Assembly (NCBI RefSeq): GCF_001194135.2
Contig: NC_068998.1
Location: 2,393,548 to 2,457,547, forward strand
From: Octopus bimaculoides
Taxonomy: Eukaryota
Direction of reading: 5' to 3'
DNA length: 64,000 nucleotides
Shown here in pieces: positions 54,846 to 64,000 of the stretch (within the stretch, counting starts at the first letter, position 1; each line of letters begins with the position of its first letter). The notes beneath the pieces were generated by a model. The model was not told the DNA's origin and searched no databases. It saw nothing but the letters and a program-made list of their open reading frames with translations. The translations under genes were made by a program, and so were the position numbers.

Positions 54846-56707
54846 GTGAGTTAGATTTCTTTTCTCTCTCTCTCTCTCCCTCTCTCTCTCTCCCCATACA
54901 CACACACACAAATCATTTCATTCCAGCCTTGCAGTAATTTCTTTCCAGTCAGCTTGTTTAAAATCTCTTGGGTGCTTTTCAATCAAATTTCTGGTCAACT
55001 TCACACATTTCTTCTACAACCAAATAACGTCTCTGTTTTTCCCCCACATTTATTTCCACTCAACTTTTCATTAAGAATTAAGTCAATTTCGATGCCAAGA
55101 CTCTTCTCCACCATTCCCAGTGAAACTGCCAATTTATGTTCTTCTCACAGACAGACTTATTCCAAGAATGAAATGTCAACCCCACCTTCTCTCATAATGC
55201 CAACTTTCTTGTGAAGATTTTCTGACCAGTTTGGTTTTTTTTCTGATTTTATTCAAAATTTTTTAATCCGGTTTCCAAAATATTTCCAGCAACTTGAAGT
55301 GGTCACATGCTAATTGCTTTACCAATTTATAGTGACAGGACCAGACAATACGATTTAATCACAAAAATATTTGGATACAATTAATATTAGTTACCATTAT
55401 TTTGTTATCGGAATTGTTATATTTTAAACCAAAAGGTATGGAGATATATATTTAATATGATTTAATATGATTTAACTTTTTTACTGCAGAAATCAGATAA
55501 ATCCACTTAAAATTTCATTACCGTTAATTACAGAAGCAGTTTTATATGTAAATCTATCTTTTCTTGAGGAATATTATGTTTGAAAGTAATTTTTGTTGTG
55601 ATATGTCGAGTTTATTGAGGGGACATGACTTGCAGAAAATACCAATTCTATTTTTTGATGGATATTTAAGATCATATCTGGAATAACCTTGGAATTCAGT
55701 TTCACAGTTAAAGGGTTAACATTATCATTCTTCTTGTTCTTCTTTGTCTTTTCTTTTTTCCCAATATTTAGTTCCATCCACTATGTTCAAGAAAAGCCCT
55801 GTGGCCTAGTGGTTAAGGTGCTGTACTCCTGGCTCCCAGATCACAGTTTCAGTTCCTGGACCAGGGGGTTTGTTGTGGTTTTGAGTAAAACATTTCAGGT
55901 TGGTCCAGTCCAATCAGCCATAAATGACTGACTCCACTACAGACCTGTGCCCCATTCACTTCTGCTCCATGGGAACTGGGTAACTGGCCCTATGAGTTCT
56001 CAGACTTGAGACAGAAATGTCCAGGGGTCAATAATGATGATTTTGTTCAGAGTTCAAATCCCTTGAAATCCATAGGTACCAGACATACACTGGGGCCAAA
56101 TCAGTCAACTAAAGACAGAAATCATCATCATCATCATCATCATCATCAGAGTGCAAAGGAAAATACTTTTATGGTTTATGTTGAGTTCAAATTCTTATTG
56201 TTTCCCTTGAAATTACTGGCCTTGTGCTTATGGTAGAAAGGATTATTATTATAATTATATTTCCTTTGCTCAGCTTCTAACACAGAGGGAGGGGGGTCAC
56301 TATCAGTGTTCATTATCAATGGACTCTGAGGCAACACCCCTTATTTTTCAAGCACCCTCTGGTCAATTTACTTCTCAGATTCTACTTGCTCTGGTGAATT
56401 CCGTAAGAGGGGACAACAACCTGTTTTCAAGGATCTCACAGGGTCTCTTTTCATGATACTTAACATCCGAGCACCAGTTCCAAAATCCTTGCTGTCCCCC
56501 AATAAAGCAGTTTTCTGAGTATGTTCTACCCTCATCTCAATCCCAATTTCTCTAACAAAAATTTCTGAAACTTGCTTGTTTTTCATCATCATCATCCTGA
56601 ATTCTTTATAAAATATGTTATTTACAACTTTTTCGTGTAGACAAAAAGCAGTGACGGATGTTTGCCCTTATCTTTCAGTAATGAAACTTCTAGAGAGACT
56701 CATACAA

Positions 56708-57041
56708 ATGGCTGACCATTTGTTGCAGCTGTTGTTGTTGCTGCATGTTTCTTGCACCATTTGCCAACAGGCTGCAATTTCCCAATCCGACATGGTTCGA
56801 AATGTAACTTACAGAAAGGTTCTCAACCGGAATTTCAGACTCTCCTTTGGCATCAACAGAAGCCATCATCGTCAAGAGAGGAGGATGCGCAGCGTTATTG
56901 AGTGCAGTATATTTTGCATGGCTTCACCAAGTTGCACCTTTTTCACCTTTTGGAGGAAGAAGAAATGTGAGAGATTCAACGATTGGCAAACGATTACCCT
57001 CTCGTCTTCAAAGAAAGATGTTTCCTACATACGGCTTCACG
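56708..57041 (+). CDS. PAN-domain gene exon (signal peptide + PAN/apple)
   Basis: Acceptor at 56678, ATGs at 56681 and 56708, donor G|gtaagg at 57042. Confidence 0.8.
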
Positions 57042-60000
57042 GTAAGGAAACTGATTATGTTGGGGGGAGAGGGAGAGACACACACACACGCATAAAAGAG
57101 AACACACAAACACATATGAAACAGACCTTCACACACACACACACACACTGAGTTTGTCAAATTCTTTTCATGTACCTCAATTTAAGTACCTAATTTAACT
57201 GAATCTTATATATATATAATGAACATTACCAATGTACAAGCAGTGTCCTTTACTTCCAATCTCCCTTAAAAAAAACATATCCTCAATAGGAAAATATTAC
57301 CTCGCTTGGTGACAGGTGAGCGTTAGCAACAGGAAAGGCATCCAGCTGTAGGTAATCAGTATCAATAAATTCTGTCTGACCCATGCAAGCATGGAGAATA
57401 GGACATTAAAACAATTACAAAAATGTGTACACTAAGTAATTTCATCAATTGTATGTTTTTTGGTTTCTTTTCCTTTATTTGTCTCCTTTGAATTTTTTCT
57501 TTCCTTTTCAAGACTCTTCGTGGTATAAAGCCTTCTCATTCAACACCAATTCCATGTCTAACCCTGCTGATGTATTCTTTGGCAAATATAATCAAAGTCG
57601 CCCTAATTCTGAATTCTACCGAAGTTCTCTCCTTGATGTCTGGGACTCTCTTAATATTAACGAGGTAAACCTTTTAAGTCCTCTTTCAAAGGGATTTTTT
57701 TTTTATTTCCCCTCATCCTTCATCTGTTGACTTTTTAGATTTTCAACCCTGTGGTTTTGGGTTCATTCCTTATGTGTGGCACCTTGGGCATCTTCTCCTA
57801 TAACCCTGTTAGCCGCCAAATGCCTTATGATGACTTTGATAGACATAAACTATGTGAAAGCCTATCGTATGTTTGTGTTTGCTTTTCCCATCACCACTCG
57901 ACAGCTGGTGTTGGTTTGTTTTCATCCTTGTCATTTAGTGGTTCGGCAAAAGAGAATGGTATTGTATGCTATTTCTATCAAGTTGAGTGACCCCAAGGAG
58001 GGACACTATAGCCTGTGTGTTTCTTGCAGTGGTTAATATACAATGGCTCAAGGGAAACATTAATGGTGCCACTAATATGGGGCACCTGAGGACCTGTGAA
58101 GGACCATGGGGTACTGACCCTTCCTTGTGAACCAGGGAGTAAAAAAAATAAAACAAAAATAAAACAAAAATAAGAGAGAAACACACAAACAAGGATAAGA
58201 AAAGAGAGTGGGGAGTGAAGAGATAGAGGTACAGTAAAGAAAGAAAGAAAGCAAGAAGGAAATCTATTTTGAATACTCTCCGCCACTGCCACCACGGGTC
58301 TCACCATAACTTTATCATCTCAATTTCTCGCTTTCTCCTCCAAGGTGAAAATAGTTCTAAGAAAAGCTGATAAAGATGTCCTCACCTTGAAGTTTGCAGC
58401 CATCAACACCAACATTGGCAACTGGTTTTCTGGTTCCAACCTAAAATCTACTCCTTGGTCTGATCTACCACCAGACAATACAACATACAAGATGGATATT
58501 GTCTATAAGTGAGTTACAACTGGTTTTCAATCATAGCTTTATGCACACACACACACACACACACACACACGGGTATGGCTCCCCAACCACATACAAGGGG
58601 GTGCTGAAAAGTTCCTGGCTTTGGATAAAAGAAAATACAGGTGGATCAGTTGATTGATTTCATCACTCATTCAGACAACATGGCCTGCTTATATATATAT
58701 ATATATATAATCACCATGTCTCTTTCATTCACTCTGTGAGTTACTTGGTGACTTCAGCAGTGCTGACAGCATGATGAAATGCACCTCGTGCACTCTGTTA
58801 AATGGTTGACGAATTGAGCAGAGGATTCTTTAGTATTGCTGAAGGTAGGGCAACCTCTCCAGTGCTGGTGTCTCAAGAAACTGCCCCCCCAGTTTTGCTC
58901 TGTAATGTGATTGGTGTCAAAACTTTGTAAAGATGATCAGATGCGGCATGGACCTGCAGTTCACCTAAGAGGGCAACAAATGTCTTGGATTATAAACAAC
59001 TGCCCAACCCATACCAATATAGAAACTTGGTGGGAGGAGGGCAGACGATACGACTGGATGGTTTATGTATTGATTTGCTAAGACATGGGATGAGTGTCCA
59101 AGACAACTGTAGGCAAAACACTATATTCGACACCTAAAGTGTTAACAATGATATTCTCCAGCTAATTTGATGATAATGCCATTGGTAATCTGGGGATGAT
59201 ATCCTCGATAATCTGTTATTCATTCCTGCTGCTTCAATCCCATTGCAAAATTCCTCAAAACCATTGCTGATGTTTTGCCCCTCCCCAAGAGAGATCTATG
59301 AAGTCAATAGTGCCATTGCAATTCCATCACGGTTTTGCTACCATTCCACTACAATCCCATTACTGTCCCTGAGTGACACACTTTTAAGTCTTCCTTTTAA
59401 ACCCCAATCTTCTCTCCACCAACCACCCCCTCACTCAAAATGTTCCTTATTTTCATATTGTAGCATAACAAGTGATGTTAATTTACATAACACTAACCAA
59501 GTTGACCATGGTAACAGCACTAACAACATTGACTACAGTAACCAAGGTAACACCACTAGCCAGGGTGACAACAATTATCAAGGCAACTACAGTACCCTGT
59601 GTAACAATACCGAAGTTGACAATAATAGAAATGAACGTAGTTTCCGTTCTTTCAAACAGAGGAAGAGGTGCAATTTGCCAAAACGGTGTGAAGGACGTAA
59701 ATGCTGGAATACATATGATGAGAGTAAAGTCGGGGAGAACGAGGGTAAAGATGAAGCTAAGAAGGTGGACGACGATGATGATGATAAGGACAAAGAGAAA
59801 TGCAAGGGTAACGGGAAGGGTAAGGGCGATTGTAAGGATGAAGAGAAGGACAAAGAGAAATGCAAGGGCGATTGTAAGGATGAAGAGAAGGACAAAGAGA
59901 AATGCAAGGGTAACGGGAAGGGTAAGGGCGATTGTAAGGATGAAGAGAAATGCAAGGGGAAGGGTAAGGGCGATTGTAAGGATGAAGAGAAGGACAAAGA

Positions 60001-61656
60001 GAAATGCAAGGGTAACGGGAAGGGTAAGGGCGATTNNNNNNNNNNNNNNNNNNNNNNNNNNNNNNNNNNNNNNNNNNNNNNNNNNNNNNNNNNNNNNNNN
60101 NNNNNNNNNNNNNNTAAGGACAAAGAGAAATGCAAGGGTAACGGGAAGGGTAAGGGCGATTGTAAGGATGAAGAGAAGGACAAAGAGAAATGCAAGGGGA
60201 AGGGTAAGGGCGATTGTAAGGATGAAGAGAAGGACAAAGAGAAATGCAAGGGTAAGGGCGATTGTAAGGATGAAGATAAGGGCAGTGATGCTGGTAAAGA
60301 TAAGTGCAAAAACCATGGAAAGGGCCAGGATCGGTGCAATGTCGGTGATGGAAGCCTCAACAGTAACCATGGCAATAACAGTAAGCAAGAAAACAACAGT
60401 GACCACAGTAACAACGGTAACCATAGCAACAGCAGCAACGACCTCAATTCTGAAGAGAAACACCGGAGTTCAGAGAAAAACAACCCAAGGTAATGATCAT
60501 TGTTTTTGTTGTTATATTTTAGCCCTAGGTCAATAGATCTATGTGATCAATATATTAAGAAAATCACTGACAGCACGAAACTGGCTCAAATTCTAAATTT
60601 GACCCCAACCATCAAATCTCCTTCATTAATATTGTTCATTAAATTGCTGTTTCGTTTAGACTTGTTGTCTTTTACCGTGGCCATGCTGGAGCAGCACTGC
60701 CTTGAAGGAATCGACCCCAGGATTTTCTTTTCTTTAAAGCCTGGTTCTTATTTTATTGCATCTTTTTACAGGGACATAAACATACCAACACTGGTTGTGA
60801 AGCAGTGGTGGGGGACAAACACAGGCACAAACACACATATACACTCATAGGTGTGTGTGTATATACACACACACACACACACACACATATGATGGGCTTC
60901 TTTCAGTTTTTGTTTAACAAATCCATTCACACGGTGCTGTGCAATGGGACTGAACTGAGAAACATGTGGTTGGGAACCAAACTTCTTACCACCCAGCCAC
61001 ACTTGTACCTAGGACATTCAAACACGCAACAAATGATTTTTAGAATTGTCTCACCTATTTGCCTCATCCTCAGTAATAAACCAGTTCTGGCAATAAATTA
61101 AGGACCAGTCAAATACTGGAGTCAATGTAATCAGCTTTGCCCCTCCCCACAAATTCTGGGCCTTGTGCACATTGGACACAGTGCTTCATCCATCTTTACG
61201 TTCTGAGTTCAAATTCCACTGAGGTCAACTATGCCTTTCATTCTTTCAGGATCAATGAAATAAGTATCAGTCATGTACTGGGGTCAACGTAATTGACTAG
61301 CTCCCTCACCCAAAATTTCAGGCCTTGTGCCAACAGTAAAAGGGATTATCAATATTGTGAAGATTATTATTATTTCTTTTTGCCAGGTGTGCTTTTTGTA
61401 TTTTTGTGGGTGATTCCCGTATTTGGTTAATGGTTTCAAACACCAAGCCAAGCAACTGGACCACACTTTCACAAGACAACCGTCACTCAATCTGGTATTT
61501 AGAAGAAGGCAAAAAAGCTGATGGCAATCCTGAAGGTAAGAACAAAGCTTTAAGCACCTTACAACTTTTATTCCAGACTAAAATGGCAAATAACCCCTTC
61601 AAAGTGTGTGTGTATATATTCATGTGTTTGTATGAGAATGTATCAGTGTATTTAAA

Positions 61657-61687
<31 letters not shown>

Positions 61688-63219
61688 GTATGTATATATG
61701 TAGTGATAGAAAAGGTAAGACAACAAAAGAATGAAAGAGACCTGGATATTATGTAAATAGAGGAATTTATCTGGAAATAATGCGACAATTCTTCTCAAGC
61801 ATGACATAATGCCAACGATCTGGGTCATTGCGTACGAGAGGCTCAACACTCAGAACTCAGCCATTTTGCTTCTGTGAGGCCCAGTGTTCAAAAAGTGCTC
61901 TTTATGTGCCACCAGCATGTGTGCCTGTTGTGTGCCACCAGCATTGCTCATGACTAGGATTTCACTTGGCTTGATGTCTGTCTCTTCTCAAGCACAGCAC
62001 ATAGCCAAAGGTCTCGGTCCCTCGTCATTGGCCCCTGTGAGGCTCAAAGTTCGAAGATCATGCTTCACCACCTCATCCCATGTCTTCCTGGGTCTACCTC
62101 TACCACAGGTTCCCTCCACTGTTAGAGATCAGCACTTCTTCACACAGCTGTCCTCTTCCATATGCATCACATCACCATACCAACGCAGTCGTCTCTCTTG
62201 CATACCACATCTGATGCCTTTTATACCTAACTTTTCTTTCAAGATGCTTACACTCTGTCGTGTATACACACTGACATTGCACATCCAGCAAAGCACACTG
62301 GCTTCATTTCTTTCAAGCCTACACGTCCTCAGCTGTCATAACCCATGTTTCACTGCTGTGTAGCATAGCTGTTCGCACGCAGGCATCATACAATCGTGTT
62401 TGCATGCATATAGACCTGTGTGTGTGTGCATGAGGTATTTGTTTATATTTACATAACATACATATAAATACAAATACGTATAAACATGTATATACACGAA
62501 ACACACAAATGTGTGCACACATGCACAAATCCAAATGCAAGATCATGCACTCCAGCATGCACATGCATGTTTGTGTGCACTTGTAATCACGTCTTCCATC
62601 ATTCGTTTGCATGCACTAGTTCACAAGCTTATGTGTTGTGCACCTTTGCATGTTCTGCTGTGCACTTGAACGCATGTACAAGTTTGCGTACATATTCACG
62701 TGTGTGTGATATTAAAACCAAGTGAAACCGTAGTTGTGGCCAATGCTGGTGTTACGTGACTGGCACCTACATCAGCACATAAAAGGACACCCATTAAACT
62801 CTTGGAGTGGTTGGCATTAGGAAGGGCATCCAGCTGTAGAAACCATACCAAACCAGACTGGAGCCAGGTGCAGCTCTCTGGCTTACCGTCTCTGGTCAAA
62901 CCATCCGACCCATGCCAGCATGGAAAGCAGACGCTAAATGATGATATATATAAAATACCAATTTGAGAGGAATCAAACAGCACAAGTCTTTGATTATATT
63001 GACCTGGTTTAAATAAAGCAAAGGAAACAGTTTACGCAAAAGTTGATAAAAGGTTTTCATGTCATAATGGCTAAAGACACCTTAAACACCTTAAACACCT
63101 GGATTGTTTCCCCTTCAGAAGTGGGTCTGCTGCTCTTTTATGTCTAAACATCAAATATTTGTGTTTCAGATTATTTGGTAAAAGCTGACAGCATGACTAT
63201 CTATGTTCAACTTGAGTGA
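56708..63219 (+). CDS. Secreted protein: signal peptide, PAN/apple domain and an unnamed C-terminal domain; 282 aa, or ~624 aa with the repeat exon
   Basis: Exons 56708(or 56681)-57041, 57513-57664, 58345-58508, [59464-60489], 61387-61535, 63170-63219; all GT-AG and phase-consistent (1,0,2,2,1). MADHLLQLLLLLHVSC signal; SVIECSIFCMASPSCTFFTF..C PAN-like Cys pattern. Confidence 0.8.
57513..57664 (+). CDS. PAN-domain gene exon
   Basis: ttccttttcaag|AC...GAG|gtaaac; SSWYKAFSF...FYRSSLLDVWDSLNINE. Confidence 0.8.
58345..58508 (+). CDS. PAN-domain gene exon
   Basis: ctctcccaag|GTG...AA|gtgagt; VKIVLRKADKDVLTLKFAAINTNIGNWFSGSNLKSTPWSDL. Confidence 0.8.
58592..58680. mobile_element. Mariner-like terminal fragment
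   Basis: TA-CAAGGGGGTGCTGAAAAGTTCCTGGCTT resembles a mariner TIR; no second end found. Confidence 0.45.
59464..60489 (+). CDS. Candidate in-frame low-complexity exon (Asn-rich / KDKEKCKGNGKGKGDCKDEE repeats / Asn-Ser-rich)
   Basis: Acceptor ttccttattttcatattgtag|C, donor AG|gtaatg; phase 2/2 like the intron it sits in; no stop across 1026 nt as assembled (includes a 79-N gap). Confidence 0.65.
59786..60277 (+). repeat. Modular coding minisatellite (21 nt KDKEKCK + 0-18 nt GNGKGK + 21 nt GDCKDEE)
   Basis: Units directly visible on both sides of the gap at 60036-60114. Confidence 0.9.
61387..61535 (+). CDS. PAN-domain gene exon
   Basis: ttctttttgccag|G TGT...G|gtaaga; CAFCIFVGDSRIWLMVSNTKPSNW...IWYLEEG. 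Confidence 0.75.
61960..62397 (-). mobile_element. RTE-clade LINE 3' fragment
   Basis: LYDACVRTAMLHSSETW...; same family as 31620-32300. Confidence 0.85.
63170..63219 (+). CDS. PAN-domain gene terminal exon
   Basis: gtgtttcag|AT TAT...TGA; DYLVKADSMTIYVQLE*. Confidence 0.72.
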
Positions 63220-63714: not shown

Positions 63715-64000
63715 TTACAAATCCATCGGAGCATACTTGCTTCGCTTCTTGCATGCTTACGCATGTCCTCAGCAGTCACGGCCCATGTTTCACTTCCTGG
63801 GCCTACCTCTTCCACGGGTTCCCTCAACTGTTAGGGTGTGGCACTTTTTCACGCAGCTATCCTCCTCCATTCTCACCACATGTCCATACCAGCACAATCG
63901 TCTCTCTTGCACGCCACAACTGATGCTTCTAATGTTCAGCTTTTCTCTCAAGATACTTACACTCTGACGGGTATTCACATTGACATTACACATCCAACGG
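63715..64000 (-). mobile_element. RTE-clade LINE fragment, rearranged, continuing past the window edge
   Basis: LREKLNIRSISCGVQERRLCWYGHVVRM...GRGRPRK followed by SETWAVTAEDM. Confidence 0.85.

What the first reader, a model, noticed from the sequence alone, without database searches (positions are those of the whole stretch)
59464..60489. Hidden ~340-codon charged Cys/Lys repeat exon splitting the C-terminal domain of a secreted PAN protein
Seen: inside the phase-2 intron 58509-61386 is a stop-free segment with a strong acceptor (ttccttattttcatattgtag|C) and donor (AG|gtaatg), both exactly phase 2. Inclusion gives ...DIVYN-ITSDVNLH...EKNNPR-CAFCIF in frame. It encodes an Asn-rich part with N-glycosylation sequons (NST, NTT, NYS, NNT), a basic Cys segment with dibasic sites (QRKR, PKR), D/E/K/G/C repeats and an Asn/Ser tail. 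Inference: this is a real, possibly alternatively spliced, exon. The architecture (globular domain interrupted by a low-complexity insert) is analogous to molluscan nacrein, whose carbonic anhydrase domain is split by Gly-X-Asn repeats, hinting at a matrix, adhesive or mineral-binding role.
Basis: partly seen in the sequence, partly recalled or inferred. Interest (0 to 1): 0.8.

Follow-up and report, generated by a model that had tools for sequence, protein, structure and literature searches.

The report
Annotated repeat-rich exon in octopus gene
The "hidden" exon is real sequence with correct splice phases, but all four public Octopus bimaculoides gene models for this secreted PAN-domain protein already include it; it is a lineage-specific tandem-repeat exon that puts a long charged, cysteine-bearing, probably disordered segment into a loop of the C-terminal domain, and its function is unknown.

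Summary
Window 59464-60489 is an open, phase 2/2 segment with an AG acceptor and a GT donor. It joins exon 3 (…DIVYN|ITSDV…) to exon 4 (…EKNNPR|CAFCIF…).

It is not hidden. The window is Octopus bimaculoides chromosome CM046618.1. Four public models contain this exon with these exact junctions: UniProt A0A0L8IDZ1, XP_014773361.1, XP_014773369.1 and XP_052830469.1. They differ only in how they jump the N gap. No exon-skipping model is in the 15-billion-protein collection.

Both gap flanks carry the same repeat in the same codon register. All unit lengths are multiples of 3, so whole-unit gap content keeps the frame. The gap content itself is unknown.

A family HMM matches both halves of the C-terminal domain separately. 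In AlphaFold2 models the insertion codon sits in a loop between two beta-strands. A paralogue has a phase-2 intron at the same place and no such exon, so this is a lineage-specific exon gain. Of 92 family and related proteins held, only this gene is split.

I found no evidence for alternative splicing. The nacrein analogy is architectural only. The matrix or mineral role is untested. Transcript support could not be checked here. Interest is low to moderate.

The parts
56681..57041 (+). Exon 1: ATG, signal peptide (MADHLLQLLLLLHVSCTICQ) and PAN/Apple domain. The following intron is phase 1.
   Evidence: Sequence read. Pfam PAN_1 E=1.3e-4, 22.1 bits against a cutoff of 21.4. Foldseek matches PAN modules at probability 1.0. 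A1 profile matches MIC4 and HGF N domains in the PDB. Identical to P0001 residues 1-120.
57513..57664 (+). Exon 2: start of the C-terminal domain (DSSWYK...LNINE).
58345..58508 (+). Exon 3: VKIVLRK...YKMDIVY plus AA of the split codon. Donor taa|GTGAGT, phase 2.
59464..59626 (+). Candidate exon, part 1: Asn-rich segment with 5 N-glycosylation sequons (NIT, NST, NTT, NYS, NNT). Acceptor ttccttattttcatattgtag|C.
59627..59785 (+). Candidate exon, part 2: basic Cys segment (RSFKQRKRCNLPKRCEGRKC, pI 10.9) followed by an acidic segment ending in DDDDDD.
59786..60035 (+). Candidate exon, part 3: tandem coding repeats left of the gap. Units KDKEKCKGNGKGKGDCKDEE and shorter in-frame variants (60, 42, 60, 42 and 45+ nt).
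   Evidence: TRF periods 42 and 102. Codon-level dissection. Repeat family D1.
60036..60114 (.). Assembly gap of 79 N inside the repeat array. True length and content are unknown.
   Evidence: The same gap is present in GCA_001194135.2. Public models jump it in three different ways.
60116..60277 (+). Candidate exon, part 4: tandem repeats right of the gap (60, 54 and 48 nt), in the same codon register as the left side.
60278..60489 (+). Candidate exon, part 5: a degenerate repeat copy (KDKCKNHGKGQDRC keeps the C-x9-C spacing), then an Asn/Ser/His tail with 4 sequons. Donor AAG|gtaatg, phase 2.
61387..61535 (+). Exon 4 of the skipping numbering: second half of the C-terminal domain (CAFCIFVGDSRIWLMV...GNPE).
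   Evidence: HMM match to model positions 181-266, E=4.4e-9.
63170..63219 (+). Last exon: DYLVKADSMTIYVQLE and the TGA stop.
   Evidence: Gene span in L001 10001-16539 equals window 56681-63219.

Best explanation
Window 59464-60489 is a genuine internal coding exon of a secreted Octopus bimaculoides protein. That protein has a signal peptide, a PAN/Apple domain and a roughly 170-residue beta-rich C-terminal domain belonging to an uncharacterised metazoan extracellular family. The exon is already annotated.

Shown:
- The exon lies inside an intron whose position and phase (2) are shared with a paralogue that lacks the exon.
- It is phase-symmetric (2/2).
- Its core is a young coding minisatellite of 42-60-nt units that are almost identical at the DNA level. 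This explains why the short-read assembly broke there.
- The insertion point falls in a loop between two beta-strands of the C-terminal domain.
- Both domain halves still match the family profile.

Inferred:
- The exon arose in this lineage by exonisation of, or insertion into, the ancestral intron, and then grew by in-frame repeat slippage.
- Its purine-rich (GAR-type) sequence probably acts as a dense exonic splicing enhancer. That would help a >1-kb internal exon be included despite splice sites that are only moderately strong.
- The product is a long, hydrophilic, probably disordered and N-glycosylated segment. It carries both charges at high density, has a cysteine about every 10 residues, and extrudes from the folded domain.
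- The most likely role is as a spacer or cross-linking arm, through intermolecular disulfides and charge interactions, on a lectin-like secreted protein. The dibasic RKR/KR sites may allow convertase cleavage.

The confidence given (0.75) is for the structural statement: a real, included, lineage-specific coding exon in a loop of the domain. The proposed cross-linking role alone deserves about 0.3.
For: Public annotation:
- Four public models use exactly these junctions.
- The window is identical to the annotated assembly over 17.3 kb.
- Neither skipping product is in the collection.

Sequence:
- Both junctions are phase 2 and the frame is open.
- The unique 5' part of the exon is open in frame in only 0.05-0.3% of shuffles.
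- Repeat-unit length differences are all multiples of 6 nt, and both gap flanks share one codon register.
- A degenerate copy keeps the C-x9-C spacing.

Domain structure:
- The family HMM hits both halves with complementary model coordinates. Only this gene is split among the 92 proteins held.
- AlphaFold2 models have pLDDT 85.8 and 90.8. The insertion codon K226 lies between strands 218-222 and 227-233.

Origin:
- Paralogue LOC106873068 has a phase-2 intron at the homologous site, 3.2 kb long, with no homologous exon.
- The exon is unique within the window.

Composition of the insert.
Against: - No RNA-seq, cDNA or peptide evidence could be examined. I do not know how far the public models rest on transcript evidence.
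- The ORF is also open in other frames, so ab initio predictors could have been drawn to it.
- By my crude PWM the splice sites are weaker than most of the gene's other sites. Seven stronger donor-like sites (AAGG|GTAAGG) lie inside the repeats.
- The gap content is unknown.
- Orthologues in other cephalopods could not be retrieved, so conservation is untested.
- The second half of the domain has lost the family's near-invariant Cys pair, which could mean relaxed constraint.
- The proposed function rests on composition only.
Confidence: 0.75

Rival explanations
1. The exon is real but is a regulated cassette. Both an including form (>600 aa) and a skipping form (291 aa) are made in different tissues.
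For: - The exon is phase-symmetric, and skipping gives an intact domain (...DIVYK-CAFCIF...).
- AlphaFold2 folds the skipping form confidently.
- By my crude PWM the candidate's acceptor and donor score below those flanking the whole intron.
- The exon is young and lineage-specific. From general knowledge, young exons are often alternative.
Against: - No public model skips it. The exact 291-aa and 313-aa skipping products are absent from the collection.
- The two 2015 RefSeq isoforms differ only at the N-terminus and both include the exon.
- The purine-rich content favours inclusion (inference).
Confidence: 0.2
2. Annotation artefact. An intronic minisatellite that happens to be open and flanked by AG and GT was pulled into gene models by predictors, while the true mRNA joins 58508 to 61387.
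For: - The region is open in several frames, because it is T-poor and 3n-periodic.
- The internal exon is more than 1 kb, against 149-164 nt for its neighbours.
- No other family member has an insert.
- No transcript evidence was seen here.
- The three ways of jumping the gap show that the models are partly improvised.
Against: - The same boundaries appear in all four models, which by their accessions come from at least three annotation sets.
- Both junction phases match, and the two gap flanks read the same peptide register although each frame is fixed by a different neighbouring exon.
- All repeat-length variants are in frame.
- Cys spacing is kept in a diverged copy.
- The unique 5' part of the exon is open at P of about 0.0005-0.003.
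Confidence: 0.12
3. Nacrein-like biomineral or matrix protein: the charged repeat binds calcium or mineral.
For: - The architecture, a globular domain split by a low-complexity repeat, parallels nacrein-like proteins, whose CA-like domains carry inserted Gly-X-Asn repeats (PMC4066178, found).
- The insert is rich in Asp and Glu.
Against: - There is no carbonic anhydrase domain and no Pfam hit of any kind in the insert.
- The repeat has near-balanced charges (50 K+R against 43 D+E, pI 8.6), not the strongly acidic character expected of a mineral binder.
- From general knowledge, octopuses lack a mineralised shell.
- No literature link was found.
Confidence: 0.05

Closest known systems
Public O. 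bimaculoides gene models XP_052830469.1, XP_014773361.1, XP_014773369.1 and UniProt A0A0L8IDZ1
   Same: They describe the same gene, the same exon and the same junction peptides. They are 99-100% identical to the window translation outside the gap.
   Different: - Each jumps the gap differently. A0A0L8IDZ1 uses the GT at 60024 and the AG at 60124-60125. XP_052830469.1 uses a 96-nt GC...AG pseudo-intron, 60030-60125. The 2015 models drop 76 residue positions (27 gap codons plus 49 read residues) at a junction for which I found no in-frame GT-AG option.
- Their names ('serine/threonine-protein kinase clkA', 'GATA zinc finger domain-containing protein 14-like') probably reflect similarity of the Asn-rich low-complexity segment, not homology. 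Pfam finds only PAN_1.
Octopod PAN + C-terminal-domain paralogues (e.g. LOC106873068, LOC106884519, O. sinensis LOC118764338, Argonauta hians Ahia01_001134500)
   Same: - Signal peptide, PAN domain and the same roughly 170-residue C-terminal domain.
- A phase-2 intron at the same position, shown for LOC106873068.
   Different: - They are 240-300 aa and have only a short loop at the insertion site.
- They keep the family's conserved Cys pair. The window protein has V and S at those two positions.
Coding minisatellite (VNTR) exons of secreted glycoproteins such as mucins (own knowledge)
   Same: One large exon is built from near-identical tandem units whose length is a multiple of 3. It encodes a glycosylated, probably disordered segment and is hard to assemble.
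   Different: It is not Pro/Thr/Ser-rich. It is Lys/Asp/Glu/Gly/Cys-rich, with N- rather than O-glycosylation signals. It sits inside a folded domain rather than between domains.
Nacrein and nacrein-like proteins (PMC4066178)
   Same: A globular domain interrupted by a low-complexity repeat.
   Different: The host domain is different (no carbonic anhydrase). The repeat chemistry is different (no Gly-X-Asn array). There is no mineralisation context and no sequence relationship.
Fibrinogen-related domains (angiopoietin-like, ficolin, FGL1)
   Same: They are the best, but weak, structural matches to the C-terminal domain model.
   Different: Foldseek E is 0.02 or weaker for the domain alone, with TM 0.3-0.4 and rmsd 7-12 A. 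There is no Pfam Fibrinogen_C hit and no profile hit in the PDB.

Membership tests
PAN/Apple domain proteins | Match to the Pfam PAN_1 model above its gathering score | tested here: met
   E=1.3e-4, 22.1 bits against a cutoff of 21.4, residues 85-138 of the exon-1 ORF. This is marginal, but the family profile also hits MIC4 and HGF PAN modules.
PAN/Apple domain proteins | PAN fold | tested here: met
   Foldseek probability 1.0, rmsd 2.2-3.4 A over about 80 columns to 1hky, 1gmo, 4dur and 2ll3.
Uncharacterised metazoan C-terminal domain family (octopod LOC106873068-like; also in amphioxus, hemichordate, sea star, octocoral and bivalve) | Profile match over the whole domain | tested here: met
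   73 relatives at E<=1e-3. The HMM built from A3 matches positions 12-189 (E=3.5e-40) and 181-266 (E=4.4e-9) on either side of the insert. Taxonomic spread.
Uncharacterised metazoan C-terminal domain family | Near-invariant Cys pair (GC...C.WE) | tested here: not met
   37 of 38 aligned sequences have Cys at both columns. The window protein has V and S.
Fibrinogen-related domain | Pfam Fibrinogen_C match, or a clear fold match | tested here: inconclusive
   No Pfam hit. Foldseek best E is 2.4e-3 for the whole protein and 0.018 for the domain alone, with TM 0.3-0.4.
Nacrein-like proteins | Alpha-carbonic anhydrase domain | tested here: not met
   No CA hit in Pfam for any exon or in the PDB profile search.
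Nacrein-like proteins | Gly-X-Asn repeat insert | tested here: not met
   The repeat unit is KDKEKCKGNGKGKGDCKDEE, which has only one GNG per long unit.
Coding minisatellite (VNTR) exon | Tandem, near-identical units with length a multiple of 3, in frame | tested here: met
   TRF finds 85-100% matches at periods 42, 54 and 102. Units are 60, 54, 48 and 42 nt with identical codons.
Coding minisatellite (VNTR) exon | Copy-number polymorphism between individuals | not testable with these tools
   Only one assembly is available, and its gap lies in the array.
Alternatively spliced cassette exon | Symmetric phase, so that skipping keeps the frame | tested here: met
   Phase 2 at both ends. Skipping gives AA|G = K.
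Alternatively spliced cassette exon | Evidence of both isoforms | tested here: not met
   Neither skipping product is in the collection. All four models include the exon.

The most novel reading that the evidence does not exclude
The exon is a newborn, octopus-lineage-specific coding minisatellite. It converted one copy of a lectin-like PAN plus beta-domain secreted protein into a long, disulfide-cross-linkable structural or adhesive protein carrying both charges at high density, for example in mucus, sucker lining or egg cement. Repeat number would still be evolving and polymorphic. This would be a datable case of a new material protein arising by exon birth inside a conserved intron.
Probability: 0.15. 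Interest if true: 0.5.

Novelty: already known. Interest (0 to 1): 0.2.

Why it matters
As a discovery it matters little, because the exon is already in RefSeq and UniProt models.

The residual value is threefold:
- The public product names ('kinase clkA', 'GATA zinc finger 14-like') are probably low-complexity artefacts. The protein is better described as a PAN/Apple-domain protein with a split C-terminal domain.
- The true repeat length is unknown, because the assembly gap lies in the array and each model improvises across it.
- The locus is a clean example of lineage-specific exon gain inside a conserved phase-2 intron that coincides with a loop of the domain. It could be used to study how coding minisatellites are born and tolerated.

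Tried and rejected
- A word-index protein search with the two flanking exons found nothing. The index is evidently sparse, since the exhaustive HMMER search then found the gene's own model.
- A search with the full 601-aa model was swamped by low-complexity candidates and returned only itself.
- A search with the family alignment returned only oyster and Logan relatives. Orthologues in O. sinensis, O. vulgaris or other cephalopods could therefore not be retrieved, and cross-species conservation of the exon stays untested.
- Pfam found nothing for the insert or the C-terminal domain. The weak DUF7922 hit in an amphioxus relative was not pursued.
- The profile search of PDB sequences hit only PAN modules.
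- An alignment headed by the full-length protein (A2) misaligned the homologues' second half onto the insert. I therefore did not fold the including isoform and folded the C-terminal domain alone instead.
- Searches for another copy of the exon found none, either in the window or in the paralogue's locus, including its intron.
- Literature searches by accession, product name, 'Apple domain' plus octopus, and the supplements of an octopus mucus proteome were all empty.
- I considered a standalone nested gene and rejected it. The ORF upstream of the acceptor has no ATG followed by a signal-like start, and all four models splice the segment in.
- I considered a transposable-element origin and did not pursue it. 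The exon is unique in the window, but genome-wide copy number could not be checked.
Full report
**What is there.** The window is eukaryotic, AT-rich and full of assembly gaps. It is identical over 17.3 kb to Octopus bimaculoides assembly GCA_001194135.2, chromosome CM046618.1, around 2.44 Mb, with the same 79-N gap.

Reading the + strand gives this gene:
- Exon 1, 56681-57041: ATG, signal peptide and PAN domain.
- Exon 2, 57513-57664.
- Exon 3, 58345-58508.
- The candidate exon, 59464-60489.
- An exon at 61387-61535.
- A last exon at 63170-63219, ending in TGA.

The acceptor is ...cttattttcatattgtag|C at 59464 and the donor is AAG|gtaatg after 60489. Both are phase 2. They give ...DIVYN-ITSDV... 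and ...EKNNPR-CAFCIF....

**Is it more than chance?** Being stop-free is weak evidence by itself. The repeat part is T-poor (12% T) and is also open in a second + frame and in all three minus frames.

The non-repeat 5' part (321 nt) is more telling. It has 0, 1 and 29 stops in the three + frames, and the reading frame is open in only 0.05-0.3% of shuffles.

I scored splice sites with a crude PWM of my own, using generic human-like frequencies written from memory. The acceptor (4.2) and donor (6.3) fall in the top 2.7% and 3.5% of AG and GT sites in the window. Three of the gene's four other acceptors (7.7-8.4) and all four other donors (6.7-10.3) score higher; only the last-exon acceptor (-2.6) scores lower.

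**The gap.** The frame left of the gap is fixed by exon 3. The frame right of the gap is fixed by the downstream exon. In those independently fixed frames, both flanks read the same repeat with the same codons: AAG GAC AAA GAG AAA TGC AAG GGT AAC GGG AAG GGT AAG GGC GAT TGT AAG GAT GAA GAG.

The visible units are 60, 42, 60, 42 and 45+ nt on the left and 60, 54 and 48 nt on the right. They are essentially identical at the DNA level, and every length difference is a multiple of 6.

An in-frame closure needs a gap length of 1 mod 3, which 79 satisfies. Any whole number of units keeps the frame. What cannot be excluded is a stop or frameshift in the unread bases. The real array may also be much longer than 79 nt suggests.

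**It is already annotated.** An exhaustive HMMER search with the exon-skipping protein found a 601-aa protein at 99% identity matched in two stretches. This is XP_052830469.1. Its 90% cluster also holds UniProt A0A0L8IDZ1 (615 aa), XP_014773361.1 (579 aa) and XP_014773369.1 (557 aa).

All four contain the candidate exon with identical junction peptides. They differ only in how they cross the gap:
- A0A0L8IDZ1 uses the GT at 60024 and the AG at 60124-60125.
- XP_052830469.1 removes 60030-60125 (GC...AG).
- The 2015 RefSeq models drop 76 residue positions: the 27 gap codons plus 49 read residues.

The two 2015 isoforms differ only at the N-terminus. The exact skipping products (291 aa and 313 aa) are not in the 15-billion-sequence collection.

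So 'hidden' does not hold. Nothing I could examine supports alternative splicing, although the symmetric phase would allow it. I could not inspect the evidence behind the public models. Whether RNA-seq supports them remains to be checked.

**The host protein.**
- Exon 1 passes Pfam PAN_1 marginally.
- The AlphaFold2 model built with 31 homologues (pLDDT 85.8) superposes on PAN modules at Foldseek probability 1.0.
- The rest is a roughly 170-residue beta-rich domain with no Pfam model and no PDB sequence relative.
- Modelled alone, that domain is confident (pLDDT 90.8, pTM 0.88). It resembles fibrinogen-like domains only weakly (E 0.02 or weaker, TM 0.3-0.4).
- The domain occurs in uncharacterised secreted or mosaic proteins of octopods, bivalves, amphioxus, a hemichordate, a sea star and an octocoral.

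**Does the exon split the domain?** Yes.
- A family HMM matches model positions 12-189 before the insert (E=3.5e-40) and 181-266 after it (E=4.4e-9). Among the 92 proteins held, only this gene is split.
- In homologues the site is a loop of 2-8 residues between the 'FSI.G' and 'RRFFI' strands.
- In both models the split codon (K226) lies between strands 218-222 and 227-233.

**Origin.** Paralogue LOC106873068 lies on another chromosome (locus L002). It has an intron at the homologous position, also phase 2 (GT|GTAGGT ... cag|A), 3.2 kb long. Nothing in its locus is similar to the exon, although there is a gap in that intron.

The exon is therefore a gain in this gene's lineage inside a pre-existing intron that coincides with a loop of the domain. 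The near-identity of the units points to recent in-frame expansion. A diverged copy downstream (KDKCKNHGKGQDRC) keeps the C-x9-C spacing, which suggests the array has been read as protein for some time.

**What it probably does.** This part is inference. The visible insert is 316 residues:
- K 21%, D 13%, N 13%, G 13%, E 10%, C 6.6% (21 Cys, mostly 10 residues apart).
- GRAVY -2.1.
- 9 N-glycosylation sequons.
- A basic Cys-rich stretch with RKR and KR sites.
- A repeat core with near-balanced charges (50 K+R against 43 D+E).

That is the composition of a disordered, glycosylated segment with regularly spaced free or cross-linking cysteines. My best guess is a spacer or cross-linking arm projecting from a lectin-like secreted protein.

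The purine-rich repeats also look like GAR-type splicing enhancers (general knowledge). That would help such a large internal exon be included.

The second half of the domain has lost the family's near-invariant Cys pair (V and S instead). This may reflect altered constraint after the insertion.

[quoted passage not shown] The resemblance here is only architectural. There is no CA domain, the repeat chemistry is different, and there is no mineral context. A closer known kind is the coding minisatellite exon of secreted glycoproteins, though this one is not Pro/Thr/Ser-rich and sits inside a domain.

**Verdict.** The exon is real as far as annotation and sequence logic go, but it is already known. 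Alternative splicing and a matrix or mineral role are unsupported. Interest is low to moderate, mainly as an example of exon birth and as a correction to misleading product names.

Noticed in passing
window 59820, 59922, 59964, 60024, 60150, 60204, 60252: Each long repeat unit contains AAGG|GTAAGG. My crude PWM scores this donor-like site at 9.8, higher than the exon's real donor (6.3). These sites are in phase 1, so splicing from them to 61387 would shift the frame and, by my reading of the sequence, reach a TAA after about 14 codons. The UniProt/JGI-type model uses the one at 60024 to jump the gap.
   Followed up: partly
public models of this gene (P0001, P0075, P0076): The RefSeq product names 'probable serine/threonine-protein kinase clkA' and 'GATA zinc finger domain-containing protein 14-like' have no domain support. 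Pfam finds only PAN_1. The names probably come from similarity of the Asn-rich low-complexity segment.
   Followed up: partly
window 61387-61535 (protein residues 233 and 248 of the skipping form): The two near-invariant cysteines of the C-terminal domain family (37 of 38 aligned sequences) are V and S in this protein, and the 'P.ILYS' motif is also gone. Two other cysteines (CAFC) sit right after the insertion site.
   Followed up: partly
window 62084-62287 and 63793-63996: Two 204-nt direct copies, 80% identical. On the minus strand, ORFs across these copies include GRGRPRKTWDEVVKHDL-like peptides, so they look like fragments of an interspersed (retro)element. The UniProt model A0A0L8IDZ1 takes its divergent C-terminus (DAYTLSCIHTDIAHPAK...) from the first copy instead of the 63170 exon.
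   Followed up: partly
window 61110-61170 and 61270-61345; also 60660-60720: The intron downstream of the exon carries two similar short segments (...ggagtcaatgtaatcagc.../...ggggtcaacgtaattgac... followed by ...ttctgggccttgtgc.../...ttcaggccttgtgcc...). These look like SINE-type repeat fragments. The exon is embedded in repeat-rich intron sequence.
   Followed up: no
window 56615-56680: An in-frame upstream ATG (MLFTTFSCRQKAVTDVCPYLSV) extends the ORF. RefSeq isoform X1 uses it. The signal-peptide-like segment begins only at MADHLL, so the downstream starts look more plausible for a secreted protein.
   Followed up: no
L001 24170-26539 (beyond the window's 3' end, about 7.6 kb downstream, minus strand): The neighbouring gene is a 1267-aa DEAH-box helicase-like protein (S1, Helicase_C, HA2, OB_NTP_bind), tail to tail with this gene. 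A 5.5-kb N gap separates them.
   Followed up: no
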